Shown: positions 1,837 through 60,747 of the stretch, in pieces
Numbering within the stretch: position 1 is the stretch's first letter
Layout of the letters: every line of letters starts with the position of its first letter
Source of the DNA: Schmidtea nova
Taxonomy: Eukaryota
Direction: 5' to 3'
Length of the DNA: 64,000 bases
NCBI GenBank assembly: GCA_044892505.1
Contig: CM097882.1
Span: 312,790,001-312,854,000, forward strand
Notes under the pieces: generated by a model
Database searches by the model: none
The model's input: only the letters and a program-made list of their open reading frames with translations
Told to the model about the DNA's origin: nothing
Translations under genes and position numbers: made by a program

Positions 1837-1841
1837 AGATG

Positions 1842-6453: not shown

Positions 6454-6458
6454 ATAAT

Positions 6459-10626: not shown

Positions 10627-10632
10627 AGATGT

Positions 10633-19934: not shown

Positions 19935-19940
19935 AGATGT

Positions 19941-25213: not shown

Positions 25214-25342
25214 AATTTTTCTCAATTCATTATTTGACTTTTATTATATTTGCAACTCTTTTTTTAATTCATAACGCAATTTTGTTGTTGAATTCTCTAC
25301 TTTGTACATAAATTTTATTCAAGTGAATTCTTTCAAGGTTCG

Positions 25343-27976: not shown

Positions 27977-27982
27977 AGATGT

Positions 27983-30900
27983 GTGCCTGCATCAGCTCAA
28001 TCGTCTGCCATTCCCTCTAATGAGACTGATGCAGAGAGCACAACTAAAAATAATATTTCAACTATCGACAATCGTGATCCTGAAGTGTGGTTTTCTGATA
28101 ATGATATTGATTGGTATCTTGAAAACCACATTGATAATCCAATGCATGGATATATTAAATGCTTTATAGTAAATATCATCTGTTCTAACATCACAGAAGA
28201 TATTGTTGAAATTCCACCATCTATTAGCAATGCTGAAATTGTATTTTGTCCACTCAACATTAACAATTCGCACTGGATTCTTTTTGTTTATAGTAAGAAA
28301 ATGTTATCTTCTTACTTTATTGACCCAATCCTTGCAAACAGACAAAAGCCAATCAATAAACAAATGGCTCAGAGAATTAACCTAAAACTGAATAGATTTT
28401 TTAATCTAAATATATCTGTGTCCCGACATCCACACAAACATCTTGAATATCAAAATAACAGCTTTGATTGTGGCCCATTTACGTGTGCTTATGCTGTGAT
28501 TATCAGTAAAGATTTGAACAGCTTTCCAAATGGGTTCATAGAGAAAATTCGTACCAGTGTGCATGAAAATCAAAATCGTATGCAAATAACCGAATCCACC
28601 TTATTCGCTGGTACTAACTCCAAGATGGACATGACCAAAATAAATATCAAGAAAGCCCTTGCAAAAAAGAAAGTCATCACCAACACCTCAGATATGATCA
28701 AAGTATTGAACACTCAAAAACCGTGTGTGTCATCAATAATTAGTAAATATTACGAAAGTAATTCTAAAATAACAGTCTTATCTGCCGAACTAACTTTAAA
28801 CCTAATTGCACAAAATACCTCCTTCATAGCTGATAATGTCACTTTCAAGCAGTTCAAAGGAATCGATCATGTTATAAGTATCATTCCTAAATTTAACGAT
28901 TGGTGTCTCTTTGTCTATTCGAATAAACTTGACAGGAGCTACATGTTCGACTTCAATTATCGAAACATTGATGAAAGGCTAATTGAAATTGGTGAAAAGA
29001 TAACTGAATATCTGAATCAATTCACTCTTGTTTCTAAAATAAAATTCACACCTCATCATAGAATTTCTCATCCAACATTTCATTCTTACGATGATCAATA
29101 TTTTGCAAGTTCTTTTATTGTATTTTTTGAGAAACTTGTCTTTGAAAGAATACTGGACAATGATAAGGTTTATGACTCATTAAGTGCTCTAAAATATCAG
29201 TCTTGTAAAGATCTTTCTCCTAGCTTAAGTTTCATTAATGGTAAAATATCCGACAAAATTATTGAGGAATATTTTGCTAGCCTAAACTTATCGACCAAAT
29301 ATATTCTTCTAAACACAACAATGTGTACTGCGCTTTCAGATGATTGCACTGAATACTTGAAAGACTTTGTAAACATTGAGTGCATGATGAAGGCTACTAT
29401 AATCTTTGTAATCATTTCTCCTCCAAGAGCCAACGACTTGCTCATGGTTATTGATTACGACGCTGATGAGCACTATTTATTAAGCCCAGTCACTAATGAC
29501 TTGTTCGTTATGACTGAAGGATTCTGCTATAAATTACTAATTAAAATTAATGAGATTAGAGAGAGCACAGGTCGTTCCTTGAAATCGCGTAATTGTCGAC
29601 ATGACGTTAAAGGTTCTGGCTTATTTAGTAGGTTATTAATCTGTGCCTTTATTAAATATTATGCATTTGACCGATCTCTAGAAAATATCAATCTTCATGA
29701 AATTGGCAAAATTATCTACTCACTTGTGCCATTAGTTGATAAAAATGATAATGCTGAGGAAGAAAGACGACTAAAATCAAAAGCTGTAAACTCTTTAAAA
29801 CTAAATTTAAAACAGCGAATAGAAAAAGCCAATAATCTTATAATTTCACTTGAACACGCCAGTATTGATGAAATCATAAGTGGCATTCTTTCAAATATTC
29901 CTCGTCTTAAAGATTTGAACACCGATCACATTCGTACACCATATTTAGGTACTAAAGTAGAAAAAGCTAGAAAATTCAAAAATTCCACTGAATTTCTGTC
30001 AAACATGAAAAAGACTGTGTATAGGATTTTGGGTAACAACACAGAATCAATTGCACCTCCTTTTCAGGAAATTATTGACACTTTCAGTCATCCTGATACA
30101 TTACCTAGAAATTGGGAAAACATCTTTAAATTCACTAAGAGTTCTAAATTTAGTCTTGAATTAAATCCAATGACACCTAAAGAAATCCTTTCAAGTCTTT
30201 GCAAAGCTGACAACACTTCTCCAGGTCTTGATAATGTTTGTTATAAAGATCTTTTGCTATTAGACCCTGAATGTAAATTGCTAGCTTTTCTGTACAATAA
30301 AATCCTAAAATTAGACATTATTCCTACAAGTTGGAAATCATTTAAAACCATACTAATCCCTAAACCAGATAAAAATGGCCAATATCATAAAATATATTCT
30401 TGGCGACCAATTGCCTTATTATCTGTCATTTACAAAGTCTTCGCTTCAGTTTTGGCAAATCGTCTAAGCTTATGGATAAGAAATAATTCCATGTTACACA
30501 TTGGCCAAAAGGGTGGTTCGGAGTACGAAGGATGTATTGAACACAACTCTATTCTTTCTGCTATCGTCGAACATTCAAAATACAGCAAGTCTTCACCTTT
30601 AACAATAGCTTGGCTAGACATCAAAGATGCCTTCGGAAGTGTTCCACATGACTACATGTGGACACTGTTAAAACACATAAATGTTAGTGATAGGTTTGTA
30701 GGAATTTTAAAACTGCTCTATACTGATACAAGCTCGTTTTATTGTTGCAATAAAATGCAGACACCGGATATTCCAATAAAGAAAGGAGTTAAACAAGGTT
30801 GTCCGATCTCAATGATATTGTTTGCAATAGCTATTAACCCAGTACTTGAGTCTATTAATCTATCAAACGTTAATCCTTTTACGATTGGAACATCTCCGGT

Positions 30901-32593
30901 ACAGGTGTTGGCTTATGCGGATGATATCGCACTTATCGCGACAAATACCTCTGATCTGCAAATACTCATAAACGTTGCTGTAAACACCGCTAAAACAATT
31001 GGATTTGAATATCGTCCAGAAAAGTGCGCTTATATGCAATACCCTAAAATAGAAACTGTAAGCGAGATTTCTGTCAACAATGTTCTTATAAAAAAGATTG
31101 CAACAAATGAATTTTACCAATACTTGGGAGTACCAATAGGTGACAATAATGACCAAAGTCCCTATGAAATTCTAAGCAAAGTAATTGAAGACACAAAGAA
31201 AATAGCAAATTCTGATCTTTACGGCTGGCAAAAACTTAAAGCGTATAAGGTCTTTCTGCATTCTCGCTTGATTTTTCCATTTAGAACTAGGGAAATCAAA
31301 ACAAGTTCTTTAGCTGATTCGAGTAAAAATTCAAAATTAAATGTAAATAATACGAGTATTTTGAGGAGTCATCTTAGAAAAATATTGCACTTGCCACACT
31401 ACTCTGAGATTAGCTATTTTTATAATTCTACTGAAAACGGCGGTGCAGGCTGCATAGACTTACTTGACGAGTATCATACACAGACAATCGTGTACTTTTT
31501 CCGCTTGTTAACATCAACGTGCGAATATTCGAAAAAGATAAATACTGACTCGCTTTTATTTGTCACAAGTCCGAGACTCGGAATCAAAAATCCAGTTCTT
31601 AAACAAAGTTTAGAATGGATAAATGGAAAAGAGAGCAAGAAAAACAACAGTGGTTGCAAAACTCGATTTTATCGGTTGCGATCATCCATTGCTTACTTTT
31701 CTAAAGTTCACAACATTAAATTGTTATTTGAAACAGTGAAAGGGAATCCTTCTATCCGTATAACCACTACACTTAAGGGAACACGTATATTATTACCAAC
31801 ATTAAGAAAAGCATTGTCAATGATTTTACATTCAGCTCTCCAGGATTCGTATCTCGAGAAATGGGAGAATAGCAACCATAATAATCTGCTTGTATCTGCG
31901 ATTAAACTCTGTCCACTTGTCAACAAGCTTATTTTCCGCAGTGATTTGACAGAATTTGAATGGAGATTCGTCCATCGAGCAAGAACGAATACATTATCAA
32001 TATTTGCGAAGCCATATAAAACTGGCGAAAATCGTCTTTGTCGTAGATGTAAGCTTGAAGACGAGACTTTATCACACGTTCTTCAAACTTGTAAAATGAA
32101 CAAATCTTTGGCAACTAGTCGACATAACGCTTGCTTAGAAAAAATAAAAAGCGAGTTGAAAGATCCAAACTTGTTAGTTGTTGCGGATCATAAATGTTCC
32201 CTAGTACCGACATCAACTGAACGCGTTGATTTAATAATAACCAATAATGATAAAAAGACCATATTATTGGTAGACATGAAATGCCCAATCGATTCGGTGC
32301 CCAACTTTGACTTGGCTGATAAAAAAAACATAGAAAAGTATGATAAACTAAAATCGGAAATTAAAATAGCCAAACCCGATTATAAAGTTGAGTTGTTTAC
32401 CTGCATCATAGGCTCATTAGGATCCATTGAAATTAAAACACCTGATCTTTTAGTAAAAATGGGCGTAAAAGAAAATAAAGTAAAACGTCTGATGAAAGAG
32501 TGTGCAATTAGCAATATTGCGCACTCGGCCAAAATTTGGTACTTTCATACCAATGGCTTTCTTCCAGATAATATAAGACAAACTTTTAAATAA
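27983..32593 (+). CDS. ORF2 protease/RT/RLE polyprotein, copy 4
   Basis: Intact, same motifs. Confidence 0.95.
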   Translation: MPASAQSSAIPSNETDAESTTKNNISTIDNRDPEVWFSDNDIDWYLENHIDNPMHGYIKCFIVNIICSNITEDIVEIPPSISNAEIVFCPLNINNSHWILFVYSKKMLSSYFIDPILANRQKPINKQMAQRINLKLNRFFNLNISVSRHPHKHLEYQNNSFDCGPFTCAYAVIISKDLNSFPNGFIEKIRTSVHENQNRMQITESTLFAGTNSKMDMTKINIKKALAKKKVITNTSDMIKVLNTQKPCVSSIISKYYESNSKITVLSAELTLNLIAQNTSFIADNVTFKQFKGIDHVISIIPKFNDWCLFVYSNKLDRSYMFDFNYRNIDERLIEIGEKITEYLNQFTLVSKIKFTPHHRISHPTFHSYDDQYFASSFIVFFEKLVFERILDNDKVYDSLSALKYQSCKDLSPSLSFINGKISDKIIEEYFASLNLSTKYILLNTTMCTALSDDCTEYLKDFVNIECMMKATIIFVIISPPRANDLLMVIDYDADEHYLLSPVTNDLFVMTEGFCYKLLIKINEIRESTGRSLKSRNCRHDVKGSGLFSRLLICAFIKYYAFDRSLENINLHEIGKIIYSLVPLVDKNDNAEEERRLKSKAVNSLKLNLKQRIEKANNLIISLEHASIDEIISGILSNIPRLKDLNTDHIRTPYLGTKVEKARKFKNSTEFLSNMKKTVYRILGNNTESIAPPFQEIIDTFSHPDTLPRNWENIFKFTKSSKFSLELNPMTPKEILSSLCKADNTSPGLDNVCYKDLLLLDPECKLLAFLYNKILKLDIIPTSWKSFKTILIPKPDKNGQYHKIYSWRPIALLSVIYKVFASVLANRLSLWIRNNSMLHIGQKGGSEYEGCIEHNSILSAIVEHSKYSKSSPLTIAWLDIKDAFGSVPHDYMWTLLKHINVSDRFVGILKLLYTDTSSFYCCNKMQTPDIPIKKGVKQGCPISMILFAIAINPVLESINLSNVNPFTIGTSPVQVLAYADDIALIATNTSDLQILINVAVNTAKTIGFEYRPEKCAYMQYPKIETVSEISVNNVLIKKIATNEFYQYLGVPIGDNNDQSPYEILSKVIEDTKKIANSDLYGWQKLKAYKVFLHSRLIFPFRTREIKTSSLADSSKNSKLNVNNTSILRSHLRKILHLPHYSEISYFYNSTENGGAGCIDLLDEYHTQTIVYFFRLLTSTCEYSKKINTDSLLFVTSPRLGIKNPVLKQSLEWINGKESKKNNSGCKTRFYRLRSSIAYFSKVHNIKLLFETVKGNPSIRITTTLKGTRILLPTLRKALSMILHSALQDSYLEKWENSNHNNLLVSAIKLCPLVNKLIFRSDLTEFEWRFVHRARTNTLSIFAKPYKTGENRLCRRCKLEDETLSHVLQTCKMNKSLATSRHNACLEKIKSELKDPNLLVVADHKCSLVPTSTERVDLIITNNDKKTILLVDMKCPIDSVPNFDLADKKNIEKYDKLKSEIKIAKPDYKVELFTCIIGSLGSIEIKTPDLLVKMGVKENKVKRLMKECAISNIAHSAKIWYFHTNGFLPDNIRQTFK

Positions 32594-32950
32594 ATAATTA
32601 TATATATATATATAAATATTTGCTTTTTAAACTCTGTAAATAAAAATTAAAGTAAATATTTTGTAAAGTAATTTTTGTATTAAATATCCAATCTTTTTAA
32701 TCTGATAAATTGTCTTTGAGAGTTATTAAATTGGGAGACCAAGTATTCTGCAACGTATGTCACTTATTCTAGACTTATCAACTTCAAAAGAATACAGTCG
32801 CAAAGCTGGATGACGAAATCCAAAGAACCAGAAACTTCCATTCAGATTGAACAATTATATTTTGACTGTGATTGTTTAGGGACTAATCCATGTTGATTAG
32901 ATAATCTGTAAAAAAAATATGTCAAACTTGTTATATTTAATAAATGTTTA

Positions 32951-33944: not shown

Positions 33945-33975
33945 GGTTCGATGGTGTAGCGGTTATCACGTCTGC
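33945..33975 (+). pseudogene. 5' half (nt 1-31) of tRNA-Val split by copy 5; last 13 nt = TSD
   Basis: GGTTCG...TTATCACGTCTGC followed by element TTCGATG. Confidence 0.9.
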
Positions 33976-33979
33976 TTCG

Positions 33980-36613
33980 ATGACTCAATCACCTGCTGCT
34001 CAGTCAACTGCTGCTGATGTAATGACTCAGTCTATTGCAAATCAGTCAACTGTGACGAAGCAATATGAATTAGAAAACATTCTCAAATATCAAATTTCCA
34101 GTTTGCAATGCTTTCAATCGATTTTGGATTATTTTTCTCAACTAAATGGTGGAAATCTCGCTACTGCCTCAGTTCTATCTGATGCGAATGCAAGTCAACG
34201 GAGTTCTTTCGATCAAGGATCTAAAATTTCTCAAAACCAATCTGATAATATGCCACTTTCTTATGCTGATATTGAGACTAAATTCACTAAATCAAAGGAT
34301 TTACTGATTGTCAAGCGCCTGGATTCATTGGAGTCTCAATTTATGAATATGGCTGAAAAGTTAGATTATTTGGTTTCTTTTTTTAATGGCTCTGTTGATG
34401 ATTTATCAGATTTTCCTAAAGTAAATGAAAATAATTTAAATAATAATCCTTTCAATAAAAATAAAGTTTTTGATATCAAAGATAAATTAATTGTAAATAA
34501 TGTAGTTTTAGATAAATCAAATATTTCAGAATTTATTGAAAATAATATTGCTAAAATTCCTAATAGTTTAATTGATGTAAATAATAAAATGTGTAATTCA
34601 AATAATAAATTTCTAAATAACCCTAATAAAGAGAATGTTAAACATTTTAATAATCCCAAAGAAACATCTTCAATTGATTTGACTAACGATAAAATTATGC
34701 CAAATGAAAACATAGAAATAATTATTAAAAATAATAAAAAATCTGTTAAAATTATAGAACCTAATAAAACAACTAAACAGAAGTATGATAAATTTGAATT
34801 TAAAAATCTGGTTCGTATTTTAACGAAAAGGGAACGCCAGAAAATCTTGAATGCCTTCCCTGCTTTAATACAACTAATTAAAAAGAAAGAATCACAGAGT
34901 AAATATTTTGAAATTAATAAATTTCTTTCGAGCAAAGATTTTAATGTGAATCACTTGAATTTAATTAATTTTGATTATTTTTTCTATAGAAATTGTAATC
35001 TTTGTGTATCTTTAAAATTGTACAACGCTCCTGTCATTTCATCAGCACCAAAACCAGTTGTTTTAAAAACTATTAAATTAATTGACCATAATATCGTCAA
35101 AATAAATTCTGAAATCCCTGACTTTGTTCGAGCTCCAATGTCAATTCGAAGATTTTTATTCAATCTTTCGCACGATCTTTCAAACACTGTTTCCATCAAG
35201 GATGAGAAACACAGGGGAAATAAAATAAATAACATTCTTACTTCAATGAAACATAAACAACAATTACCAGATTATTTAATAAAATCAAACATTAAATACA
35301 AAAATGGTGAGTTCCTATTATTAGATTTGACTAACGATAAAATCAAATTGAACGACGATAATAACTTGATAAAATCAAATTTTTCTGAACTTACTAGAAG
35401 TCAGATTAAAAATCTTTACTATTCTTATCCTTCTCTTAAGGAAGTTTGTTTCGTTGAAAATCTTGAAACAAGATCATCATCCGTTAGTAAAATTATCGAA
35501 TCTTTAAAGTTAATTAATGAATTTCCAAAAAATATCATTTTTAAAGAGGGTAAATTTTATCAGTCTGATAAAAGAACAATCTCACCTAGTAGTTCTCCTG
35601 ACATAATGTTCAACCTTGGTCTTTTTAATTTAGCTAGTATGAGTAGAAAAGATTGTGAATTAAAATCCATTTTAGAGAAGACTGGTTGTGACTTTAAAAT
35701 AGTTGAAATAATATTCTACCTCAACTATTTAGGCTTGACTCAATCTTTAGAATTTTGCAAAAATCAAACTTATTCTGATTATGTGAGGAATTACGTCTGC
35801 AATTGCTGCTTGATAAACTCACTCTGTAGTATTGCTGATGTTGATTCGCTTTCATCTGATGATTTTGAGGGTTGGGCGACCGAAATTGTTCAGAAAATCC
35901 CAGTTTCTTCCTATTACTTCAATAGCTGCCAGGAAAAGCTTTTAAAGCTGAAGCAATGGGACATTTCAACTAAAATCAAAAGAATCCATAACGTTATTTC
36001 ACCTGAAATAATATCTTATTTAAATAACTTTCTTGACTCTGTAGACGTAAAATTTCCATCTAAGTCTCAACAACATAATATTCTAATTAAATTAATGAAA
36101 GCTATCAATGACATTAAAATCTTTGATGACATACACGGAAATAAAGCAAAAAGACTTGTTTACTTTTTGCTAAGAGATGCCAAGAAATATTTGAATAAAA
36201 ATCAACGATTCAGATTATTTGAATCGAGCAATAAATATTGCACTTCAGAGATGGAGAATATAATTTCAGTAATAATTGAGAACCTTACCAAAGTTACTGA
36301 CCATGAAGTTACTACTCCTGAAATCACAGTTGAAGAAACGCCAATTGAAATAACTTGTGATCCTGAACCTATCGTCTTGATTAAGGAAATAAACTGTTTA
36401 AAATGTAACAATATCATCGAAAAATGTATTCTTGTTAGAGATGGAACAAACGTCAACATCTGTGAAAGCTGTCTATTTGACGCAATTACCTTTGAAAAGC
36501 CGATTCCTGAAGCTACTAATTCGGATATCGAAGAAAATATAGAAACAAATAGTAAGAAATCTTGTCCAAGACCTAGAAAAACAGACAAGAAAACATTAAC
36601 CAAAGCAAAATGA
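33980..36613 (+). CDS. ORF1 protein, copy 5
   Basis: 877 aa intact. Confidence 0.88.
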   Translation: MTQSPAAQSTAADVMTQSIANQSTVTKQYELENILKYQISSLQCFQSILDYFSQLNGGNLATASVLSDANASQRSSFDQGSKISQNQSDNMPLSYADIETKFTKSKDLLIVKRLDSLESQFMNMAEKLDYLVSFFNGSVDDLSDFPKVNENNLNNNPFNKNKVFDIKDKLIVNNVVLDKSNISEFIENNIAKIPNSLIDVNNKMCNSNNKFLNNPNKENVKHFNNPKETSSIDLTNDKIMPNENIEIIIKNNKKSVKIIEPNKTTKQKYDKFEFKNLVRILTKRERQKILNAFPALIQLIKKKESQSKYFEINKFLSSKDFNVNHLNLINFDYFFYRNCNLCVSLKLYNAPVISSAPKPVVLKTIKLIDHNIVKINSEIPDFVRAPMSIRRFLFNLSHDLSNTVSIKDEKHRGNKINNILTSMKHKQQLPDYLIKSNIKYKNGEFLLLDLTNDKIKLNDDNNLIKSNFSELTRSQIKNLYYSYPSLKEVCFVENLETRSSSVSKIIESLKLINEFPKNIIFKEGKFYQSDKRTISPSSSPDIMFNLGLFNLASMSRKDCELKSILEKTGCDFKIVEIIFYLNYLGLTQSLEFCKNQTYSDYVRNYVCNCCLINSLCSIADVDSLSSDDFEGWATEIVQKIPVSSYYFNSCQEKLLKLKQWDISTKIKRIHNVISPEIISYLNNFLDSVDVKFPSKSQQHNILIKLMKAINDIKIFDDIHGNKAKRLVYFLLRDAKKYLNKNQRFRLFESSNKYCTSEMENIISVIIENLTKVTDHEVTTPEITVEETPIEITCDPEPIVLIKEINCLKCNNIIEKCILVRDGTNVNICESCLFDAITFEKPIPEATNSDIEENIETNSKKSCPRPRKTDKKTLTKAK

Positions 36614-36619
36614 AGATGT

Positions 36620-39600
36620 GTGCCTGCATCAGCTCAATCGTCTGCCATTCCCTCTAATGAGACTGATGCAGAGAGCACAACTAAAAATAATATTTCAACT
36701 ATCGACAATCGTGATCCTGAAGTGTGGTTTTCTGATAATGATATTGATTGGTATCTTGAAAACCACATTGATAATCCAATGCATGGATATATTAAATGCT
36801 TTATAGTAAATATCATCTGTTCTAACATCACAGAAGATATTGTTGAAATTCCACCATCTATTAGCAATGCTGAAATTGTATTTTGTCCACTCAACATTAA
36901 CAATTCGCACTGGATTCTTTTTGTTTATAGTAAGAAAATGTTATCTTCTTACTTTATTGACCCAATCCTTGCAAACAGACAAAAGCCAATCAATAAACAA
37001 ATGGCTCAGAGAATTAACCTAAAACTGAATAGATTTTTTAATCTAAATATATCTGTGTCCCGACATCCACACAAACATCTTGAATATCAAAATAACAGCT
37101 TTGATTGTGGCCCATTTACGTGTGCTTATGCTGTGATTATCAGTAAAGATTTGAACAGCTTTCCAAATGGGTTCATAGAGAAAATTCGTACCAGTGTGCA
37201 TGAAAATCAAAATCGTATGCAAATAACCGAATCCACCTTATTCGCTGGTACTAACTCCAAGATGGACATGACCAAAATAAATATCAAGAAAGCCCTTGCA
37301 AAAAAGAAAGTCATCACCAACACCTCAGATATGACCAAAGTATTGAACACTCAAAAACCGTGTGTGTCATCAATAATTAGTAAATATTACGAAAGTAATT
37401 CTAAAATAACAGTCTTATCTGCTGAACTAACTTTAAACCTAATTGCACAAAATACCTCCTTCATAGCTGATAATGTCACTTTCAAGCAGTTCAAAGGAAT
37501 CGATCATGTTATAAGCATCATTCCTAAATTTAACGATTGGTGTCTCTTTGTCTATTCGAATAAACTTGACAGGAGCTACATGTTCGACTTCAATTATCGA
37601 AACATTGATGAAAGGCTAATTGAAATTGGTGAAAAGATAACTGAATATCTGAATCAATTCACTCTTGTTTCTAAAATAAAATTCACACCTCATCATAGAA
37701 TTTCTCATCCAACATTTCATTCTTACGATGATCAATATTTTGCAAGTTCTTTTATTGTATTTTTTGAGAAACTTGTCTTTGAAAGAATACTGGACAATGA
37801 TAAGGTTTATGACTCATTAAGTGCTCTAAAATATCAGTCTTGTAAAGATCTTTCTCCTAGCTTAAGTTTCATTAATGGTAAAATATCCGACAAAATTATT
37901 GAGGAATATTTTGCTAGCCTAAACTTATCGACCAAATATATTCTTCTAAACACAACAATGTGTAGTGCGCTTTCAGATGATTGCACTGAATACTTGAAAG
38001 ACTTTGTAAACATTGAGTGCATGATGAAGGCTACTGTAATCTTTGTAATCATTTCTCCTCCAAGAGCCCACGACTTGCTCATGGTTATTGATTACGACGC
38101 TGATGAGCACTATTTATTAAGCCCAGTCACTAATGACTTGTTCGTTATGACTGAAGGATTCTGCTATAAATTACTAATTAAAATTAATGAGATTAGAGAG
38201 AGCACAGGACGTGCCTTGAAATCGCGTAATTGTCGACATGACGTTAAAGGTTCTGGCTTATTTAGTAGGTTATTAATCTGTGCCTTTATTAAATATTATG
38301 CATTTGACCGATCTCTAGAAAATATCAATCTACATGAAATTGGCAAAATTATCTACTCACTTGTGCCATTAGTTGATAAAAATGATAATGCTGAGGAAGA
38401 AAGACGACTAAAATCAAAAGCTGTAAACTCTTTAAAACTAAATTTAAAACAGCGAATAGAAAAAGCCAATAATCTTATAATTTCACTTGAACACGCCAGT
38501 ATTGATGAAATCATAAGTGGCATTCTTTCAAATATTCCTCGTCTTAAAGATTTGAACACCGATCACATTCGTACACCATATTTAGGTACTAAAATAGAAA
38601 AAGCTAGAAAATTCAAAAATTCCACTGAATTTCTGTCAAACATGAAAAAGACTGTGTATAGGATTTTGGGTAACAACACAGAATCAATTGCACCTCCTTT
38701 TCAGGAAATTATTGACACTTTCAGTCATCCTGATACATTACCTAGAAATTGGGAAAACATCTTAAAATTCACTAAGAGTTCTAAATATAGTCTTGAATTA
38801 AATCCAATGACACCTAAAGAAATCCTTTCAAGTCTTTGCAAAGCTGACAACACTTCTCCAGGTCTTGATAATGTTTGTTATAAAGATCTTTTGTTATTAG
38901 ACCCTGAATGTAAATTGCTAGCTTTTCTGTACAATAAAATCCTAAAATTAGACATTATTCCTACAAGTTGGAAATCATTTAAAACCATACTAATCCCCAA
39001 ACCAGATAAAAATGGCCAATATCATAAAATATATTCTTGGCGACCAATTGCCTTATTATCTGTCATTTACAAAGTCTTCGCTTCAGTTTTGGCAAATCGT
39101 CTAAGCTTATGGATAAGAAATAATTCCATGTTACACATTGGCCAAAAGGGTGGTTCGGAGTACGAAGGATGTATTGAACACAACTCTATTCTTTCTGCTA
39201 TCGTCGAACATTCAAAATACAGCAAGTCTTTACCTTTAACGATAGCTTGGCTAGACATCAAAGATGCCTTCGGAAGTGTTCCACATGACTACATGTGGAC
39301 ACTGTTAAAACACATAAATGTTAGTGATAGGTTTGTAGGAATTTTAAAACTGCTCTATACTGATACAAGCTCGTTTTATTGTTGCAATAAAATGCAGACA
39401 CCGGATATTCCAATAAAGAAAGGAGTTAAACAAGGTTGTCCGATCTCAATGATATTGTTTGCAATAGCTATTAACCCAGTACTTGAGTCTATTAATCTAT
39501 CAAACGTTAATCCTTTTACGATTGGAACATCTCCGGTACAGGTGTTGGCTTATGCGGATGATATCGCACTTATCGCGACAAATACCTCTGATCTGCAAAT

Positions 39601-41230
39601 ACTCATAAACGTTGCTGTAAACACTGCTAAAACAATTGGATTTGAATATCGTCCAGAAAAGTGCGCTTATATGCAATACCCTAAAATAGAAACTGTAAGC
39701 GAGATTTCTGTCAACAACGTTCTTATAAAAAAGATTGCAACAAATGAATTTTACCAATACTTGGGAGTACCAATAGGTGACAATAATGACCAAAGTCCCT
39801 ATGAAATTCTAAGCAAAGTAATTGAAGACACAAAGAAAATAGCAAATTCTGATCTTTACGGCTGGCAAAAATTTAAAGCGTATAAGGTCTTTCTGCATTC
39901 TCGCTTGATTTTTCCATTTAGAACTAGGGAAATCAAAACAAGTTCTTTAGCTGATTCGAGTAAAAATTCAAAATTAAATGTAAATAATACGAGTATTTTG
40001 AGGAGTCATCTTAGAAAAATATTGCACTTGCCACACTACTCTGAGATTAGCTATTTTTATAATTCTACTGAAAACGGCGGTGCAGGCTGCATAGACTTAC
40101 TTGACGAGTATCATACACAGACAATCGTGTACTTTTTCCGCTTGTTAACATCAACGTGCGAATATTCGAAAAAGATAAATACTGACTCGCTTTTATTTGT
40201 CACAAGTCCGAGACTCGGAATCAAAAATCCAGTTCTTAAACAAAGTTTAGAATGGATAAATGGAAAAGAGAGCAAGAAAAACAACAGTGGTTGCAAAACT
40301 CGATTTTATCGGTTGCGATCATCCATTGCTTACTTTTCTAAAGTTCACAACATTAAATTGTTATTTGAAACAGTGAAAGGGAATCCTTCTATCCGTATAA
40401 CCACTACACTTAAGGGAACACGTATATTATTACCAACATTAAGAAAAGCCTTGTCAATGATTTTACATTCAGCTCTCCAGGATTCGTATCTCGAGAAATG
40501 GGAGAATAGCAATCATAATAATCTGCTTGTATCTGCGATTAAACTCTGTCCACTTGTCAACAAGCTTATTTTCCGCAGTGATTTGACAGAATTTGAATGG
40601 AGATTCGTCCATCGAGCAAGAACGAATACATTATCAATATTTGCGAAGCCATATAAAACTGGCGAAAATCGTCTTTGTCGTAGATGTAAGCTTGAAGATG
40701 AGACTTTATCACACGTTCTTCAAACTTGTAAAATGAACAAATCTTTGGCAACTAGTCGACATAACGCTTGCTTAGAAAAAATAAAAAGCGAGTTGAAAGA
40801 TCCAAACTTGTTAGTTGTTGCGGATCATAAATGTTCCCTAGTACCGACATCAACTGAACGCGTTGATTTAATAATAACCAATAATGATAAAAAGACCATA
40901 TTATTGGTAGACATGAAATGCCCAATCGATTCGGTGCCCAACTTTGACTTGGCTGATAAAAAAAACATAGAAAAGTATGATAAACTAAAATCGGAAATTA
41001 AAATAGCCAAACCCGATTATAAAGTTGAGTTGTTTACCTGCATCATAGGCTCATTAGGATCCATTGAAATTAAAACACCTGATCTTTTAGTAAAAATGGG
41101 CGTAAAAGAAAATAAAGTAAAACGTCTGATGAAAGAGTGTGCAATTAGCAATATTGCGCACTCGGCCAAAATTTGGTACTTTCATACCAATGGCTTTCTT
41201 CCAGATAATATAAGACAAACTTGTAAATAA
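36620..41230 (+). CDS. ORF2 protease/RT/RLE polyprotein, copy 5
   Basis: Intact, same motifs. Confidence 0.95.
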   Translation: MPASAQSSAIPSNETDAESTTKNNISTIDNRDPEVWFSDNDIDWYLENHIDNPMHGYIKCFIVNIICSNITEDIVEIPPSISNAEIVFCPLNINNSHWILFVYSKKMLSSYFIDPILANRQKPINKQMAQRINLKLNRFFNLNISVSRHPHKHLEYQNNSFDCGPFTCAYAVIISKDLNSFPNGFIEKIRTSVHENQNRMQITESTLFAGTNSKMDMTKINIKKALAKKKVITNTSDMTKVLNTQKPCVSSIISKYYESNSKITVLSAELTLNLIAQNTSFIADNVTFKQFKGIDHVISIIPKFNDWCLFVYSNKLDRSYMFDFNYRNIDERLIEIGEKITEYLNQFTLVSKIKFTPHHRISHPTFHSYDDQYFASSFIVFFEKLVFERILDNDKVYDSLSALKYQSCKDLSPSLSFINGKISDKIIEEYFASLNLSTKYILLNTTMCSALSDDCTEYLKDFVNIECMMKATVIFVIISPPRAHDLLMVIDYDADEHYLLSPVTNDLFVMTEGFCYKLLIKINEIRESTGRALKSRNCRHDVKGSGLFSRLLICAFIKYYAFDRSLENINLHEIGKIIYSLVPLVDKNDNAEEERRLKSKAVNSLKLNLKQRIEKANNLIISLEHASIDEIISGILSNIPRLKDLNTDHIRTPYLGTKIEKARKFKNSTEFLSNMKKTVYRILGNNTESIAPPFQEIIDTFSHPDTLPRNWENILKFTKSSKYSLELNPMTPKEILSSLCKADNTSPGLDNVCYKDLLLLDPECKLLAFLYNKILKLDIIPTSWKSFKTILIPKPDKNGQYHKIYSWRPIALLSVIYKVFASVLANRLSLWIRNNSMLHIGQKGGSEYEGCIEHNSILSAIVEHSKYSKSLPLTIAWLDIKDAFGSVPHDYMWTLLKHINVSDRFVGILKLLYTDTSSFYCCNKMQTPDIPIKKGVKQGCPISMILFAIAINPVLESINLSNVNPFTIGTSPVQVLAYADDIALIATNTSDLQILINVAVNTAKTIGFEYRPEKCAYMQYPKIETVSEISVNNVLIKKIATNEFYQYLGVPIGDNNDQSPYEILSKVIEDTKKIANSDLYGWQKFKAYKVFLHSRLIFPFRTREIKTSSLADSSKNSKLNVNNTSILRSHLRKILHLPHYSEISYFYNSTENGGAGCIDLLDEYHTQTIVYFFRLLTSTCEYSKKINTDSLLFVTSPRLGIKNPVLKQSLEWINGKESKKNNSGCKTRFYRLRSSIAYFSKVHNIKLLFETVKGNPSIRITTTLKGTRILLPTLRKALSMILHSALQDSYLEKWENSNHNNLLVSAIKLCPLVNKLIFRSDLTEFEWRFVHRARTNTLSIFAKPYKTGENRLCRRCKLEDETLSHVLQTCKMNKSLATSRHNACLEKIKSELKDPNLLVVADHKCSLVPTSTERVDLIITNNDKKTILLVDMKCPIDSVPNFDLADKKNIEKYDKLKSEIKIAKPDYKVELFTCIIGSLGSIEIKTPDLLVKMGVKENKVKRLMKECAISNIAHSAKIWYFHTNGFLPDNIRQTCK

Positions 41231-41584
41231 ATAATTATATATATATAAATATTTGCTTTTTAAACTCTGTAAATAAAATTTAAAGTAAATATTTTGTAAA
41301 GTAATTTTTGTATTAAATATCCAATCTTTTTAATCTGATAAATTGTCTTTGAGAGTTATTAAATTGGGAGACCAAGTATTCTGCAACGTATGTCACTTAT
41401 TCTAGACTTATCAACTTCAAAAGAATACAGTCGCAAAGCTGGATGACGAAATCCAAAGAACCAGAAACTTCCATTCAGATTGAACAATTATATTTTGACT
41501 GTGATTGTTTAGGGACTAATCCATGTTGATTAGATAATCTGTTAAAAAAAATATGTCAAACTTGTTATATTTAATAAATGTTTA

Positions 41585-41639
41585 TTATCACGTCTGCCTA
41601 ACACGCAGAAGGTCCCCGGTTCGATCCCGGGTCGAACCA
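41585..41639 (+). pseudogene. 3' fragment (nt 19-73) of tRNA-Val split by copy 5
   Basis: Starts with the TSD. Confidence 0.9.
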
Positions 41640-42355: not shown

Positions 42356-42359
42356 TTCG

Positions 42360-44993
42360 ATGACTCAATCACCTGCTGCTCAGTCAACTGCTGCTGATGT
42401 AATGACTCAGTCTATTGCAAATCAGTCAACTGTGACGAAGCAATATGAATTAGAAAACATTCTCAAATATCAAATTTCCAGTTTGCAATGCTTTCAATCG
42501 ATTTTGGATTATTTTTCTCAACTAAATGGTGGAAATCTCGCTACTGCCTCAGTTCTATCTGATGCGAATGCAAGTCAACGGAGTTCTTTCGATCAAGGAT
42601 CTAAAATTTCTCAAAACCAATCTGATAATATGCCACTTTCTTATGCTGATATTGAGACTAAATTCACTAAATCAAAGGATTTACTGATTGTCAAGCGCCT
42701 GGATTCATTGGAGTCTCAATTTATGAATATGGCTGAAAAGTTAGATTATTTGGTTTCTTTTTTTAATGGCTCTGTTGATGATTTATCAGATTTTCCTAAA
42801 GTAAATGAAAATAATTTAAATAATAATCCTTTCAATAAAAATAAAGTTTTTGATATCAAAGATAAATTAATTGTAAATAATGTAGTTTTAGATAAATCAA
42901 ATATTTCAGAATTTATTGAAAATAATATTGCTAAAATTCCTAATAGTTTAATTGATGTAAATAATAAAATGTGTAATTCAAATAATAAATTTCTAAATAA
43001 CCCTAATAAAGAGAATGTTAAACATTTTAATAATCCCAAAGAAACATCTTCAATTGATTTGACTAACGATAAAATTATGCCAAATGAAAACATAGAAATA
43101 ATTATTAAAAATAATAAAAAATCTGTTAAAATTATAGAACCTAATAAAACAACTAAACAGAAGTATGATAAATTTGAATTTAAAAATCTGGTTCGTATTT
43201 TAACGAAAAGGGAACGCCAGAAAATCTTGAATGCCTTCCCTGCTTTAATACAACTAATTAAAAAGAAAGAATCACAGAGTAAATATTTTGAAATTAATAA
43301 ATTTCTTTCGAGCAAAGATTTTAATGTGAATCACTTGAATTTAATTAATTTTGATTATTTTTTCTATAGAAATTGTAATCTTTGTGTATCTTTAAAATTG
43401 TACAACGCTCCTGTCATTTCATCAGCACCAAAACCAGTTGTTTTAAAAACTATTAAATTAATTGACCATAATATCGTCAAAATAAATTCTGAAATCCCTG
43501 ACTTTGTTCGAGCTCCAATGTCAATTCGAAGATTTTTATTCAATCTTTCGCACGATCTTTCAAACACTGTTTCCATCAAGGATGAGAAACACAGGGGAAA
43601 TAAAATAAATAACATTCTTACTTCAATGAAACATAAACAACAATTACCAGATTATTTAATAAAATCAAACATTAAATACAAAAATGGTGAGTTCCTATTA
43701 TTAGATTTGACTAACGATAAAATCAAATTGAACGACGATAATAACTTGATAAAATCAAATTTTTCTGAACTTACTAGAAGTCAGATTAAAAATCTTTACT
43801 ATTCTTATCCTTCTCTTAAGGAAGTTTGTTTCGTTGAAAATCTTGAAACAAGATCATCATCCGTTAGTAAAATTATCGAATCTTTAAAGTTAATTAATGA
43901 ATTTCCAAAAAATATCATTTTTAAAGAGGGTAAATTTTATCAGTCTGATAAAAGAACAATCTCACCTAGTAGTTCTCCTGACATAATGTTCAACCTTGGT
44001 CTTTTTAATTTAGCTAGTATGAGTAGAAAAGATTGTGAATTAAAATCCATTTTAGAGAAGACTGGTTGTGACTTTAAAATAGTTGAAATAATATTCTACC
44101 TCAACTATTTAGGCTTGACTCAATCTTTAGAATTTTGCAAAAATCAAACTTATTCTGATTATGTGAGGAATTACGTCTGCAATTGCTGCTTGATAAACTC
44201 ACTCTGTAGTATTGCTGATGTTGATTCGCTTTCATCTGATGATTTTGAGGGTTGGGCGACCGAAATTGTTCAGAAAATCCCAGTTTCTTCCTATTACTTC
44301 AATAGCTGCCAGGAAAAGCTTTTAAAGCTGAAGCAATGGGACATTTCAACTAAAATCAAAAGAATCCATAACGTTATTTCACCTGAAATAATATCTTATT
44401 TAAATAACTTTCTTGACTCTGTAGACGTAAAATTTCCATCTAAGTCTCAACAACATAATATTCTAATTAAATTAATGAAAGCTATCAATGACATTAAAAT
44501 CTTTGATGACATACACGGAAATAAAGCAAAAAGACTTGTTTACTTTTTGCTAAGAGATGCCAAGAAATATTTGAATAAAAATCAACGATTCAGATTATTT
44601 GAATCGAGCAATAAATATTGCACTTCAGAGATGGAGAATATAATTTCAGTAATAATTGAGAACCTTACCAAAGTTACTGACCATGAAGTTACTACTCCTG
44701 AAATCACAGTTGAAGAAACGCCAATTGAAATAACTTGTGATCCTGAACCTATCGTCTTGATTAAGGAAATAAACTGTTTAAAATGTAACAATATCATCGA
44801 AAAATGTATTCTTGTTAGAGATGGAACAAACGTCAACATCTGTGAAAGCTGTCTATTTGACGCAATTACCTTTGAAAAGCCGATTCCTGAAGCTACTAAT
44901 TCGGATATCGAAGAAAATATAGAAACAAATAGTAAGAAATCTTGTCCAAGACCTAGAAAAACAGACAAGAAAACATTAACCAAAGCAAAATGA
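42360..44993 (+). CDS. ORF1 protein, copy 6
   Basis: 877 aa intact. Confidence 0.88.
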   Translation: MTQSPAAQSTAADVMTQSIANQSTVTKQYELENILKYQISSLQCFQSILDYFSQLNGGNLATASVLSDANASQRSSFDQGSKISQNQSDNMPLSYADIETKFTKSKDLLIVKRLDSLESQFMNMAEKLDYLVSFFNGSVDDLSDFPKVNENNLNNNPFNKNKVFDIKDKLIVNNVVLDKSNISEFIENNIAKIPNSLIDVNNKMCNSNNKFLNNPNKENVKHFNNPKETSSIDLTNDKIMPNENIEIIIKNNKKSVKIIEPNKTTKQKYDKFEFKNLVRILTKRERQKILNAFPALIQLIKKKESQSKYFEINKFLSSKDFNVNHLNLINFDYFFYRNCNLCVSLKLYNAPVISSAPKPVVLKTIKLIDHNIVKINSEIPDFVRAPMSIRRFLFNLSHDLSNTVSIKDEKHRGNKINNILTSMKHKQQLPDYLIKSNIKYKNGEFLLLDLTNDKIKLNDDNNLIKSNFSELTRSQIKNLYYSYPSLKEVCFVENLETRSSSVSKIIESLKLINEFPKNIIFKEGKFYQSDKRTISPSSSPDIMFNLGLFNLASMSRKDCELKSILEKTGCDFKIVEIIFYLNYLGLTQSLEFCKNQTYSDYVRNYVCNCCLINSLCSIADVDSLSSDDFEGWATEIVQKIPVSSYYFNSCQEKLLKLKQWDISTKIKRIHNVISPEIISYLNNFLDSVDVKFPSKSQQHNILIKLMKAINDIKIFDDIHGNKAKRLVYFLLRDAKKYLNKNQRFRLFESSNKYCTSEMENIISVIIENLTKVTDHEVTTPEITVEETPIEITCDPEPIVLIKEINCLKCNNIIEKCILVRDGTNVNICESCLFDAITFEKPIPEATNSDIEENIETNSKKSCPRPRKTDKKTLTKAK

Positions 44994-44999
44994 AGATGT

Positions 45000-49610: not shown

Positions 49611-49963
49611 ATAATTATATATATATAAATATTTGCTTTTTAAACTCTGTAAATAAAATTTAAAGTAAATATTTTGTAAAGTAATTTTTGTATTAAATAT
49701 CCAATCTTTTTAATCTGATAAATTGTCTTTGAGAGTTATTAAATTGGGAGACCAAGTATTCTGCAACGTATGTCACTTATTCTAGACTTATCAACTTCAA
49801 AAGAATACAGTCGCAAAGCTGGATGACGAAATCCAAAGAACCAGAAACTTCCATTCAGATTGAACAATTATATTTTGACTGTGATTGTTTAGGGACTAAT
49901 CCATGTTGATTAGATAATCTGTAAAAAAAATATGTCAAACTTGTTATATTTAATAAATGTTTA

Positions 49964-50229: not shown

Positions 50230-50233
50230 TTCG

Positions 50234-52867: not shown

Positions 52868-52873
52868 AGATGT

Positions 52874-58103: not shown

Positions 58104-58107
58104 TTCG

Positions 58108-60741: not shown

Positions 60742-60747
60742 AGATGT

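What the first reader, a model, noticed from the sequence alone, without database searches (positions are those of the whole stretch)
33945..41639. Intact tRNA-Val(AAC)-specific RLE retrotransposon family with a precise 13-bp target-site duplication
Seen: all 7 visible 3' junctions lie exactly at tRNA nt 18|19. All 4 class B 5' junctions lie at nt 31|32, duplicating TTATCACGTCTGC (D-loop 3' side to the 5' strand of the anticodon stem). Insertion is always in the tRNA sense orientation and all ORFs are intact. Established: R2-superfamily elements use a C-terminal RLE and target-primed reverse transcription at multicopy genes (R2/R5 in 28S rDNA, NeSL in SL1, Utopia in U2). NeSL-1 carries a Ulp1-like protease and planarian R5 has two ORFs. 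Inference: this is a NeSL/R5-clade family that nicks the bottom strand at 18|19 and the top strand at 31|32 and was active recently. I do not recognise a described tRNA-Val-specific family with this architecture, although tRNA-targeting non-LTR families are known. The target lies in a well-conserved part of eukaryotic tRNA-Val, so the element is also a candidate site-specific gene-insertion tool.
Basis: partly seen in the sequence, partly recalled or inferred. Interest (0 to 1): 0.85.

Follow-up and report, generated by a model that had tools for sequence, protein, structure and literature searches.

The report
Retrotransposon that targets tRNA-Val genes
The window is a tandem array of valine tRNA genes, and about a third of them are split at exactly the same base by intact, nearly identical copies of a 7.6-kb "copy-and-paste" element; it is a new tRNA target for a known kind of site-specific retrotransposon and carries a conserved signal for reading through a stop codon.

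Summary
The window is a 253-bp tandem array of tRNA-Val(AAC) genes. Of 24 units, 15 are intact, one carries a deletion and eight are interrupted by a 7.6-kb element.

All seven visible 3' junctions lie at tRNA nt 18|19. Four 5' junctions lie at nt 31|32, which gives a 13-bp target-site duplication. Three copies share a different 5' junction in the spacer. All seven complete ORF1s and seven complete ORF2s are intact. The copies are 99.0-99.99% identical, and the differences between them are under purifying selection (pN/pS 0.2-0.4).

ORF2 has a Ulp1 protease domain followed by two degenerate Ulp1-like domains, then RT, a CCHC motif and a restriction-like endonuclease. No LTRs are present. This is an R2-group, NeSL/R5-LIN-like site-specific non-LTR retrotransposon.

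tRNA-specific members of that lineage are already published (tRNA-Arg, tRNA-Glu, tRNA-Pro; PMC4640811). I found no tRNA-Val family, so this is a new member of a known kind.

ORF1 and ORF2 are in one frame, separated by a single TGA. A conserved, covarying hairpin follows the TGA in most of the 11 related elements examined, which suggests programmed read-through. The element has almost no 5' UTR, which implies co-transcription with the array.

The host was not identified. Clade membership could not be tested by phylogeny here.

The parts
33945..33975 (+). 5' part of the interrupted tRNA-Val(AAC) gene, nt 1-31; it includes the A-box region
   Evidence: Exact match to tRNA nt 1-31, then the element begins
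33963..33975 (+). Left copy of the 13-bp target-site duplication TTATCACGTCTGC (tRNA nt 19-31)
33976..41584 (+). Element copy E5, 7609 bp, with no LTR, no TIR and no poly(A) tail
33980..36613 (+). ORF1, 877 aa, with its ATG 4 nt from the 5' junction. It has predicted long N-terminal helices, a folded core at aa 275-775 and a C-terminal CxxC...CxxC motif. It matches no Pfam family and no PDB fold.
36611..36613 (+). Single in-frame TGA between ORF1 and ORF2
   Evidence: TGA and the same frame in the window element and in all 10 relatives
36620..36678 (+). Conserved 13-bp hairpin starting 6 nt after the TGA; a candidate read-through stimulator
36614..41230 (+). ORF2 (1536 aa counted from the GTG at 36620): three Ulp1-like domains, RT, CCHC and RLE
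36722..37249 (+). Ulp1/SENP-like domain 1 (ORF2 aa 35-210). H97, D114, Q157 and C163 are nearly invariant in the relatives.
37352..38374 (+). Ulp1-like domains 2 and 3 (aa 245-412 and 420-585). The H/D/Q/C residues that are near-invariant in domain 1 are not conserved here, so these are probably non-catalytic.
38993..39772 (+). Reverse transcriptase domain (Pfam RVT_1, aa 792-1051; YADD at 39551-39562)
40676..40729 (+). CCHC zinc motif (aa 1353-1370)
40859..40918 (+). Restriction-like endonuclease core (RVD at 1414-1416 and D-x-K at 1431-1433), aligned with the R2 endonuclease
41231..41584 (+). 3' UTR. The last ~45 nt (41540-41584) are conserved with relative L001, and an AATAAA lies at 41573-41578.
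41585..41639 (+). 3' part of the interrupted tRNA, nt 19-73 (B box included). Its first 13 nt (41585-41597) are the right copy of the TSD.
1..6807 (+). Copy E1 (5' end outside the window; resembles class A)
7989..15598 (+). Copy E2 (class A; 8-nt filler at 7981-7988)
17297..24905 (+). Copy E3 (class A; filler at 17289-17296)
25339..32950 (+). Copy E4 (class A; filler at 25331-25338)
42356..49963 (+). Copy E6 (class B; differs from E5 by one indel column)
50230..57837 (+). Copy E7 (class B)
58104..64000 (+). Copy E8 (class B; 3' end outside the window)

Best explanation
This is a recently active family of site-specific, RLE-type (R2-group) non-LTR retrotransposons. It most likely belongs to the NeSL-clade R5/LIN lineage, and its target is the D-loop of tRNA-Val(AAC) genes.

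Shown:
- The domain set: Ulp1 protease, two degenerate Ulp1-like domains, RT, CCHC and RLE.
- An invariant 3' junction at nt 18|19.
- A 13-bp TSD in subfamily B.
- Sense orientation in every copy.
- Intact coding capacity in every copy.
- Purifying selection on the differences between copies.
- Relatives elsewhere that sit in the same tRNA or another tRNA.

Inferred:
- The endonuclease nicks the bottom strand at 18|19, and the freed 3' OH primes reverse transcription from the exact 3' end of the element RNA. There is no poly(A) in the DNA copies, as in R2.
- A second nick on the top strand, 13 bp downstream at 31|32, gives the duplication.
- ORF1's ATG lies 4 nt from the 5' junction (0 nt in relative L004), and the sense strand holds 18 runs of five or more T. 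The RNA is therefore most likely a Pol II read-in transcript that starts in the array upstream, not a tRNA-promoter (Pol III) transcript.
- ORF1 and ORF2 share one frame and are separated by a single UGA, which is followed by a conserved hairpin. In 9 of the 10 elements where it could be scored, no AUG lies before the conserved start of the protease domain. I therefore propose programmed UGA read-through. It would give much ORF1 protein and a little ORF1-ORF2 polyprotein, which the catalytically intact first Ulp1 domain cuts into its parts.
- Which part recognises the tRNA gene is unknown. There is no R2-type zinc-finger/Myb N-terminus. ORF1 or the degenerate Ulp1-like domains are candidates.
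For: Junctions and TSD.

Copies 99.0-99.99% identical.

Intact ORFs. There are seven ORF1s and seven ORF2s of invariant length. No stops occur where about 4.8 are expected among 94 variant codons. pN/pS is 0.39 for ORF1 and 0.21 for ORF2. It is 0.35 for singleton variants and 0.18-0.30 within class A.

Domains:
- Pfam RVT_1 4.6e-29 and Peptidase_C48 6.4e-07.
- R2 proteins are the best PDB sequence hits, 2e-52.
- The CCHC+RLE region aligns with R2 at 1.3e-07 and is invariant in 12 sequences.
- The N-terminal model matches Ulp1/SENP folds.
- The three domains are related to one another.
- No LTR or TIR.

Relatives with the same layout:
- L005 lies in an identical tRNA-Val(AAC), next to tRNA-Val(CAC) and tRNA-Val(TAC) genes.
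- L001's 3' end is followed by another tRNA's D-arm.

Read-through signal:
- TGA and the same frame in the window element and all 10 relatives.
- Hairpin with 98.9% of cells paired, against 11-42% in slid controls, and two pairs with compensatory changes.
- Hairpins of different sequence at the same place in L007 and L009.
- A model built without L009 finds it at the expected place.
- The first Met of ORF2 lies after the conserved domain start in 9 of 10.

T-runs and AATAAA.

Literature: tRNA-Arg, tRNA-Glu and tRNA-Pro specific NeSL-clade families and Ulp1 in NeSL (PMC4640811).
Against: - No reference sequences of NeSL-1, R5, LIN or Utopia were available, so the clade assignment rests on architecture, on the paper's description and on a by-eye likeness of 3' ends.
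- One 64-kb window cannot show exclusivity for tRNA-Val.
- Three copies share one aberrant 5' junction. E6-E8 are spaced exactly 7874 bp apart, and their flanking units share variants. Recombination within the array has therefore probably contributed to the copy number.
- PMC3636483 states that all NeSL elements described by 2013 make target deletions, not duplications.
- Read-through, protease processing, co-transcription and the nick positions have no direct evidence here.
- The individual hairpins in L007, L008, L009 and L010 are not significantly more stable than shuffles.
- The 3' UTR as a whole shows no significant fold.
Confidence: 0.8

Rival explanations
1. The element entered the array once or a few times. 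Most of the eight copies in the window then arose by unequal crossing-over, block duplication or gene conversion within the tandem array, not by repeated retrotransposition. On this view the family need not be active now.
For: - E2-E4 share one identical aberrant 5' junction with an 8-nt filler.
- E6, E7 and E8 start exactly 7874 bp apart.
- The split tRNA units between E6-E8 share variants not seen in the other units.
- The intact tRNA units are homogenised; six consecutive units are identical.
Against: - Differences between copies are strongly biased to synonymous sites, even inside class A (pN/pS 0.18-0.30) and among singletons (0.35, P=4e-4). There are no stops or frameshifts. Neutral decay after block duplication would not give this.
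- 7874 bp equals 7608+253+13, which is also what independent insertions into adjacent units would give.
- E5 and E6 are nearly identical but have different flanking-unit variants.
- The numbers of tRNA units between copies differ.
Confidence: 0.25
2. ORF2 is translated on its own, by reinitiation, a non-AUG start or internal entry. The conserved hairpin after the TGA has another role, for example as a binding site for the element's proteins on its RNA.
For: - Other non-LTR elements express ORF2 without fusion to ORF1 (established knowledge for L1, from memory).
- A GTG follows the stop by two codons in seven elements.
- L008 has a Met at codon 3.
- My limited literature search found no published read-through case in a non-LTR element.
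Against: - Same frame in 11 of 11 elements and TGA in 11 of 11. Chance is about (1/3)^10 for each, if the elements are taken as independent.
- The hairpin starts 6-10 nt after the stop.
- The first AUG falls inside or after the conserved protease domain in 9 of 10.
Confidence: 0.2
3. The family is not specific for tRNA-Val as such. It may be confined to this one array, or it may have a looser preference for several tRNA D-arms or other repeats.
For: - Only one locus is visible.
- Related families sit in another tRNA (L001) and in an unidentified 201-bp tandem repeat (L004), so targets shift readily in this clade.
- Dada-tV DNA transposons show loose tRNA specificity (PMC8869645).
Against: - Seven of seven 3' junctions lie at one base.
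- The more distant relative L005 (44% identity) lies in an identical tRNA-Val(AAC) in a non-tandem cluster of another genome. It is 4 nt away from this site and lies upstream of intact tRNA-Val(CAC) and tRNA-Val(TAC) genes.
Confidence: 0.2
4. The TGA is an ordinary sense codon in the host, either through a reassigned genetic code or as selenocysteine. ORF1-ORF2 would then be one plain 2415-codon ORF.
For: ORF1 and ORF2 are in frame in all the elements.
Against: - Exactly one TGA occurs in about 2415 codons of an AT-rich gene, always at the same boundary.
- No SECIS or any other Rfam family is found in the element at E<=1.
- The same arrangement occurs in relatives from several different samples.
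Confidence: 0.03

Closest known systems
LIN15_SM and LIN25_SM (Schmidtea mediterranea; R5/LIN lineage of the NeSL clade; Kojima & Jurka 2015, PMC4640811)
   Same: Both are RLE-type non-LTR retrotransposons specific for tRNA genes (tRNA-Arg and tRNA-Glu). In the paper's S6 Fig their A/T-rich 3' termini end in ...ATAATAA..TTTTAA directly against the tRNA, without poly(A). By eye these resemble the window's ...TATTTAATAAATGTTTA.
   Different: The target here is tRNA-Val(AAC), at D-loop nt 18|19. The paper names no tRNA-Val family.
NeSL-1 (Caenorhabditis elegans spliced-leader genes) and Utopia-1_TSP
   Same: They have an Ulp1-like cysteine protease upstream of the RT, a C-terminal zinc motif and an RLE, and they insert into a multicopy small-RNA gene (PMC4640811).
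   Different: - The target differs.
- NeSL elements are described as single-ORF and as making target deletions (PMC3636483). Here there is a separate 877-aa ORF1, an in-frame UGA and a 13-bp duplication in subfamily B.
- Here there are three Ulp1-like domains.
- Named nematode and arthropod relatives are only 26-30% identical.
R2 (28S rDNA)
   Same: - The RT, CCHC and RLE core; R2 proteins are the best PDB matches (9nl2 2e-52; RLE region 1.3e-07).
- An exact 3' junction without poly(A).
- No promoter of its own, so dependence on co-transcription.
- Precise site specificity.
   Different: - No N-terminal zinc-finger/Myb region is detected.
- There is an extra ORF1 and there are protease domains.
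- The target is a tRNA gene.
- No HDV-like ribozyme is found at the 5' end.
NeSL-1_TV (Trichomonas vaginalis, tRNA-Pro specific; PMC4640811)
   Same: It is an RLE element that inserts within a tRNA gene.
   Different: The host kingdom and the tRNA differ. The paper calls its phylogenetic position unresolved, and no sequence was available here.
Dada-tV DNA transposons of fish (PMC8869645)
   Same: They occupy the same niche, inserting inside tRNA-Val genes.
   Different: They are class II transposase elements. They insert in the anticodon arm and also land in tRNA-Gly, tRNA-Ala and tRNA-Asp.
Read-through signals of the 'stop codon plus downstream RNA structure' type (retroviral gag-pol, alphavirus UGA; from memory, with review PMC13517186 listed)
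   Same: An in-frame stop is followed after a short spacer by a stable, phylogenetically conserved stem.
   Different: The context here is a non-LTR retrotransposon. My limited search found no such case described. Function is untested.

Membership tests
RLE-type (R2-group) non-LTR retrotransposon | Reverse transcriptase of the non-LTR type | tested here: met
   Pfam RVT_1 at 4.6e-29. Best PDB matches are R2 and then LINE-1 ORF2p. YADD is invariant.
RLE-type (R2-group) non-LTR retrotransposon | C-terminal CCHC motif followed by a PD-(D/E)XK-like endonuclease, and no APE domain | tested here: met
   CCHC at aa 1353-1370 and D1416...D1431-x-K1433 are invariant in 12 sequences. The region aligns with the R2 endonuclease at 1.3e-07. 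There is no PF03372 hit.
RLE-type (R2-group) non-LTR retrotransposon | No long terminal or inverted terminal repeats | tested here: met
   The repeat finder on E5 shows only short internal chance-level pairs.
RLE-type (R2-group) non-LTR retrotransposon | Insertion by target-primed reverse transcription | not testable with these tools
   Inferred only, from the exact 3' junctions, variable 5' junctions and the TSD.
NeSL clade, including the R5/LIN lineage | RT-domain phylogeny groups it with NeSL-1, R5 and LIN | not testable with these tools
   No Repbase/Dfam references are on hand, and the NeSL-1 and R5 papers are not held. Named hits are only 26-30% identical.
NeSL clade, including the R5/LIN lineage | Ulp1-like cysteine protease upstream of the RT (present in NeSL and Utopia-1_TSP, not in all members) | tested here: met
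   Pfam C48. H, D, Q and C are nearly invariant. The fold matches Ulp1/SENP.
NeSL clade, including the R5/LIN lineage | Sequence-specific insertion into a multicopy RNA gene | tested here: met
   Seven of seven 3' junctions lie at tRNA-Val nt 18|19.
NeSL clade, including the R5/LIN lineage | Target-site deletion on insertion (said of all NeSL elements described by 2013; a habit, not a definition) | tested here: not met
   Subfamily B makes a 13-bp duplication. Subfamily A shows a deletion.
R2 clade proper | N-terminal zinc-finger/Myb DNA-binding region, a single ORF and a 28S rDNA target | tested here: not met
   No such Pfam domains. The N-terminus consists of Ulp1-like folds. There are two ORFs and the target is a tRNA.
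Programmed stop-codon read-through | In-frame stop with a conserved downstream RNA structure and covariation | tested here: met
Programmed stop-codon read-through | Translation demonstrably continues past the stop | not testable with these tools
   This needs ribosome-profiling or proteomic data from the host.

The most novel reading that the evidence does not exclude
This clade of tRNA-gene-specific RLE retrotransposons would be the first non-LTR lineage shown to make its RT-endonuclease as a 'gag-pol-like' ORF1-ORF2 polyprotein. It would do so by programmed UGA read-through driven by a conserved downstream hairpin. A built-in Ulp1 protease would then cut the polyprotein. A lineage-restricted ORF1 protein with no known fold, or the degenerate Ulp1-like domains, would read the tRNA gene in place of the zinc-finger/Myb module of R2.
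Probability: 0.4. Interest if true: 0.7.

Novelty: new member of a known kind. Interest (0 to 1): 0.5.

Why it matters
Site-specific RLE retrotransposons are few, and how they recognise their targets is well understood only for R2.

This window offers a family with eight nearly identical, fully coding copies, exact junctions inside a tRNA gene and two subfamilies with different 5' junctions. At least ten related families have shifted targets: the same tRNA 4 nt away, another tRNA, and an unidentified tandem repeat. That is a natural series for studying how target choice evolves.

The conserved in-frame UGA with its hairpin adds a testable case of translational recoding in a class of elements where it is not an established strategy.

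For the host, a third of the tRNA-Val(AAC) genes in this stretch are inactivated. This bears on tRNA gene dosage and on the concerted evolution of tRNA arrays.

Tried and rejected
- The word-index search with ORF1 found nothing. The exhaustive HMMER search found only 17 relatives in 1.84 billion representatives, all unnamed.
- The ORF1 model has a confident core but no PDB fold match; the best E-value is 0.075.
- The JGI metagenome scan with the RT-RLE alignment returned only distant RTs (28-45% identity) with no tRNAs nearby. It added nothing to the target census.
- Rfam finds no ribozyme, SECIS or other family in the element. It also finds no family for L004's 201-bp target repeat.
- The 3' UTR as a whole is not more stable than shuffles, z = -0.31.
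- Host identification failed. No protein in the 5.8-billion-sequence collection is more than 61% identical. The sample accessions appear in no held paper. The S. mediterranea tRNA tables hold the 5' 18-mer of this tRNA but not a 28-mer across the D-loop and anticodon stem. A flatworm host is therefore likely by analogy, not shown.
- The R5 and NeSL-1 primary papers are not held.
- I considered that the class A copies are simple block duplicates and rejected that as the whole story because of pN/pS.
- I considered Pol III transcription from the split tRNA promoter and rejected it because of 18 T>=5 runs.


Full report
**1. What is in the window**

The 64 kb hold nothing but a head-to-tail array of tRNA-Val(AAC) genes and copies of one insertion. 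Each array unit is 253 bp: a 73-nt tRNA plus a 180-nt spacer. ARAGORN intact tRNA-Val(AAC) genes, all on the + strand, and TRF finds the 253-bp period. There are no Ns.

Eight copies of a 7608-7612-bp element interrupt the array:
- E1 1-6807 (cut by the window start)
- E2 7989-15598
- E3 17297-24905
- E4 25339-32950
- E5 33976-41584 (the finding)
- E6 42356-49963
- E7 50230-57837
- E8 58104-64000 (cut by the window end)

One further unit (7296-7357) has tRNA nt 13-25 replaced by GT. So 8 of 24 units are occupied.

**2. Junctions**

I number the 73-nt gene linearly. All seven visible 3' junctions read ...AATAAATGTTTA | TTATCACG..., that is, tRNA nt 18|19.

E5-E8 are preceded by tRNA nt 1-31 exactly and then begin TTCGATG.... 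This duplicates nt 19-31, TTATCACGTCTGC.

E2-E4 have a different 5' junction that is identical in all three. The spacer stops 117 nt after the preceding tRNA. Eight bases (TTTCAAGG) follow, and then the same TTCGATG.... This removes about 63 nt of spacer and tRNA nt 1-18.

**3. Coding capacity and age**

Seven ORF1s (877 aa) and seven ORF2s (1536 aa) are complete and of invariant length. I count no stops and no frameshifts. The remaining ORF1 and ORF2 are cut only by the window edges. All length differences between copies lie outside the ORFs.

Copies differ by 0 to 60 substitutions, which is 99.0-99.99% identity. E5 and E6 differ by a single indel column.

Variant codons are biased to synonymous changes:
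- pN/pS is 0.39 for ORF1 and 0.21 for ORF2.
- No nonsense changes occur where about 4.8 are expected.
- The bias holds for variants private to one copy (0.35, P=4e-4) and within class A (0.18-0.30).

Sixteen fixed differences separate E2-E4 from E5-E8, and E1 sides with E2-E4. There are therefore two subfamilies, each with its own 5' junction. Most divergence arose in lineages that still needed their proteins.

**4. What the proteins are**

ORF2 carries Pfam RVT_1 (aa 792-1051) and Peptidase_C48 (aa 81-179). Its best matches among solved structures are R2 retrotransposon proteins (9nl2, 2e-52), followed by LINE-1 ORF2p.

The C-terminal 337 aa align with the CCHC and endonuclease region of R2 at 1.3e-07. 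The residues C1353, C1356, H1365, C1370, D1416, D1431 and K1433 are invariant in 12 relatives.

An AlphaFold model of aa 1-740 (13 sequences, mean pLDDT 70.5) shows three successive domains with the same secondary-structure order. Foldseek matches Ulp1, SENP and NEDP1 (best 1euv, 7e-6).

Profile-profile comparison relates the three domains to one another, with probabilities of 94.9%, 94.9% and 79.8%. Only the first domain keeps the nearly invariant H97, D114, Q157 and C163.

ORF1 has no Pfam family, and only 17 relatives in 1.84 billion representative proteins. Its model has a confident core at aa 275-775, made of three beta-alpha3-beta2 repeats and a helical domain. It also has low-confidence long N-terminal helices and a C-terminal CxxC...CxxC motif. 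It has no PDB fold match.

The element has no LTRs or terminal inverted repeats. Taken together, this is an RLE-type non-LTR retrotransposon.

**5. Relatives**

The closest proteins in the 5.8-billion-sequence collection are unnamed. They come from Logan and ENA assemblies and are 41-61% identical over the RT-RLE region. Named hits (Plectus, Centruroides, Caenorhabditis angaria, Daphnia) are 26-30% identical.

Ten relatives were fetched with their contigs. All have an ORF1 followed by ORF2. Four of them show a flank:
- L005 (44% identity). Its 3' end abuts an identical tRNA-Val(AAC) from about nt 15 onward. An intact tRNA-Val(AAC), a tRNA-Val(CAC) and a tRNA-Val(TAC) follow in a non-tandem cluster.
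- L001 (59%). It shares the last ~45 nt of the 3' UTR with the window element, and the D-arm of a different tRNA follows it.
- L004 (46%). It sits in an unidentified 201-bp tandem repeat with an exact 72-bp duplication, and its ORF1 ATG lies directly at the 5' junction.

So this is a clade of site-specific elements, several of them tRNA-specific, in which the target shifts.

**6. An in-frame stop with a conserved hairpin**

In the window element and in all ten relatives, ORF1 ends in TGA and ORF2 continues in the same frame. A hairpin begins six to ten bases after the stop.

In eight of the eleven elements the arms are almost invariant at the nucleotide level, although the proteins are only 41-61% identical. 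The arms are GUGC plus CUGCAUCAG, pairing with CUGAUGCAG plus GCAC.

Across seven of these, 98.9% of cells are paired, against 11-42% when the partner is slid. Two pairs show compensatory double changes: U-A to C-G and A-U to G-C. The shuffle control is only moderately strong (8 of 500), as expected with so few varying columns.

L007 and L009 have hairpins of different sequence at the same place. A covariance model built without L009 finds it at the expected position (18.8 bits, E 0.014). The same model finds all eight copies in the window.

The first in-frame Met after the TGA lies beyond the conserved start of the protease domain in 9 of the 10 elements that could be scored.

No SECIS or other Rfam family is present. 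TGA occurs once in about 2415 codons, so a reassigned codon is unlikely.

The most economical reading is programmed UGA read-through, producing an ORF1-ORF2 polyprotein that the first Ulp1 domain could process. This is inference.

**7. How it probably works**

Shown: the site, the orientation, the TSD, the domains and the selection on coding capacity.

Inferred, by analogy with R2 (established knowledge):
- A bottom-strand nick at 18|19 primes reverse transcription from the exact 3' end of the element RNA. The DNA copies have no poly(A), although an AATAAA lies 6 nt before the end.
- A top-strand nick at 31|32 gives the 13-bp duplication.

The element has at most 4 nt of 5' UTR and 18 runs of five or more T on its sense strand, the first at nt 157. 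A tRNA-promoter (Pol III) transcript therefore cannot be full-length. The RNA most likely starts upstream in the array.

If that RNA carries upstream flank, homology-guided joining at the 5' side would explain why each subfamily reproduces its own 5' junction. It would also explain why three class A copies with selected differences share one 'aberrant' junction. This last step is the weakest part of the model. Recombination within the array is the alternative and has probably contributed as well.

**8. Comparison with what is known**

Kojima & Jurka 2015 (PMC4640811) report several relevant points:
- NeSL families and Utopia-1_TSP carry an Ulp1-like protease.
- NeSL-1_TV is tRNA-Pro specific.
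- In the planarian R5/LIN lineage of the NeSL clade, LIN15_SM targets tRNA-Arg and LIN25_SM targets tRNA-Glu.

The 3' ends of those LINs in S6 Fig resemble ours by eye.

PMC3636483 describes R2-group elements as single-ORF. It says that all NeSL elements described by 2013 make target deletions. The present family differs on both counts.

tRNA-Val is a known target of Dada-tV DNA transposons, which insert in the anticodon arm and with loose specificity (PMC8869645).

I found no tRNA-Val-specific RLE family in the held literature. I also found no description of read-through in a non-LTR element. Both searches are limited, and Repbase could not be consulted.

**9. Verdict**

The finding is real and was read correctly. 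It is a new member (tRNA-Val target, D-loop site, 13-bp TSD) of a known kind, the tRNA-specific NeSL/R5-LIN-like RLE retrotransposons. The read-through signal and the triple Ulp1 arrangement are added points of interest.

(a) While reasoning about the 11-nt flank of L001 I began to recall a tRNA sequence from memory.

(b) The script printed part of an hhalign result file. That output includes the program's own consensus lines for about 110 residues of two domain alignments. I used those lines for nothing.

Consensus lines printed by the alignment tools themselves were likewise not used.

Noticed in passing
window 36611-36678 (and the same place in E1-E8; L001-L010): ORF1 and ORF2 are in one frame and separated by a single TGA. 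A conserved, covarying 13-bp hairpin follows. The arrangement looks like a programmed read-through signal.
   Followed up: yes
window 36722-38374: ORF2 begins with three tandem Ulp1/SENP-like domains. Only the first keeps the catalytic His, Asp, Gln and Cys. At the position of the DCG motif, the third domain has a nearly invariant Ser-Gly.
   Followed up: partly
window 7981-7997, 17289-17305, 25331-25347: Class A copies carry 8 extra bases (TTTCAAGG), so their 5' end reads TTTCAA+GGTTCGATG. That is tRNA-Val nt 1-9 behind a leader like that of the dispersed tRNA-Val genes in L005. Even class B starts with tRNA nt 3-9 (TTCGATG), and its ATG is ORF1's start codon. The origin is unexplained.
   Followed up: partly
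window 7296-7357: One unoccupied tRNA unit has nt 13-25 replaced by GT, a net loss of 11 bp. The deletion spans the insertion site and may be a repair scar of a cleaved target.
   Followed up: no
L004 69-140 and 7515-7586: A relative with 46% identity sits in an unidentified ~201-bp tandem repeat (no Rfam family) with an exact 72-bp target-site duplication. Its ORF1 ATG lies directly at the 5' junction.
   Followed up: partly
L005 7040-8323: A relative with 44% identity abuts an identical tRNA-Val(AAC), about 4 nt upstream of the window's site. Intact tRNA-Val(AAC), tRNA-Val(CAC) and tRNA-Val(TAC) genes follow in a dispersed cluster.
   Followed up: partly
L001 6950-7005: The closest relative with a visible flank (59% identity) shares the 3'-terminal ~45 nt with the window element. 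It is followed by AGTGGTAGAGC, the D-arm of a different tRNA. The contig ends there, so that tRNA is not identified.
   Followed up: no
window 49964-50229 and 57838-58103: The two split tRNA units between E6, E7 and E8 share variants seen in no other unit: a C-to-T change in the T-arm at 50007/57881 and a T-to-A change at 50070/57944. E6, E7 and E8 start exactly 7874 bp apart. This is either block duplication or insertions into neighbouring, similar units.
   Followed up: partly
window 33980-34052: The start of ORF1 is a 42-nt tandem duplication (77% identical), which gives a second in-frame ATG with the same context (MTQS...MTQS).
   Followed up: no
window 6841, 33208, 41838-42089: There are sporadic variants in the array: a G-to-T change in the tRNA remnant after E1, a C-to-T change in the D-stem of an otherwise intact tRNA, and one 252-bp unit. 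All other intact units are identical, which indicates strong homogenisation.
   Followed up: no
L005, L006, L007, L008, L010: Five different families of this clade come from one metagenome assembly (ERZ27257134). One host genome apparently carries many diverged lineages side by side.
   Followed up: no
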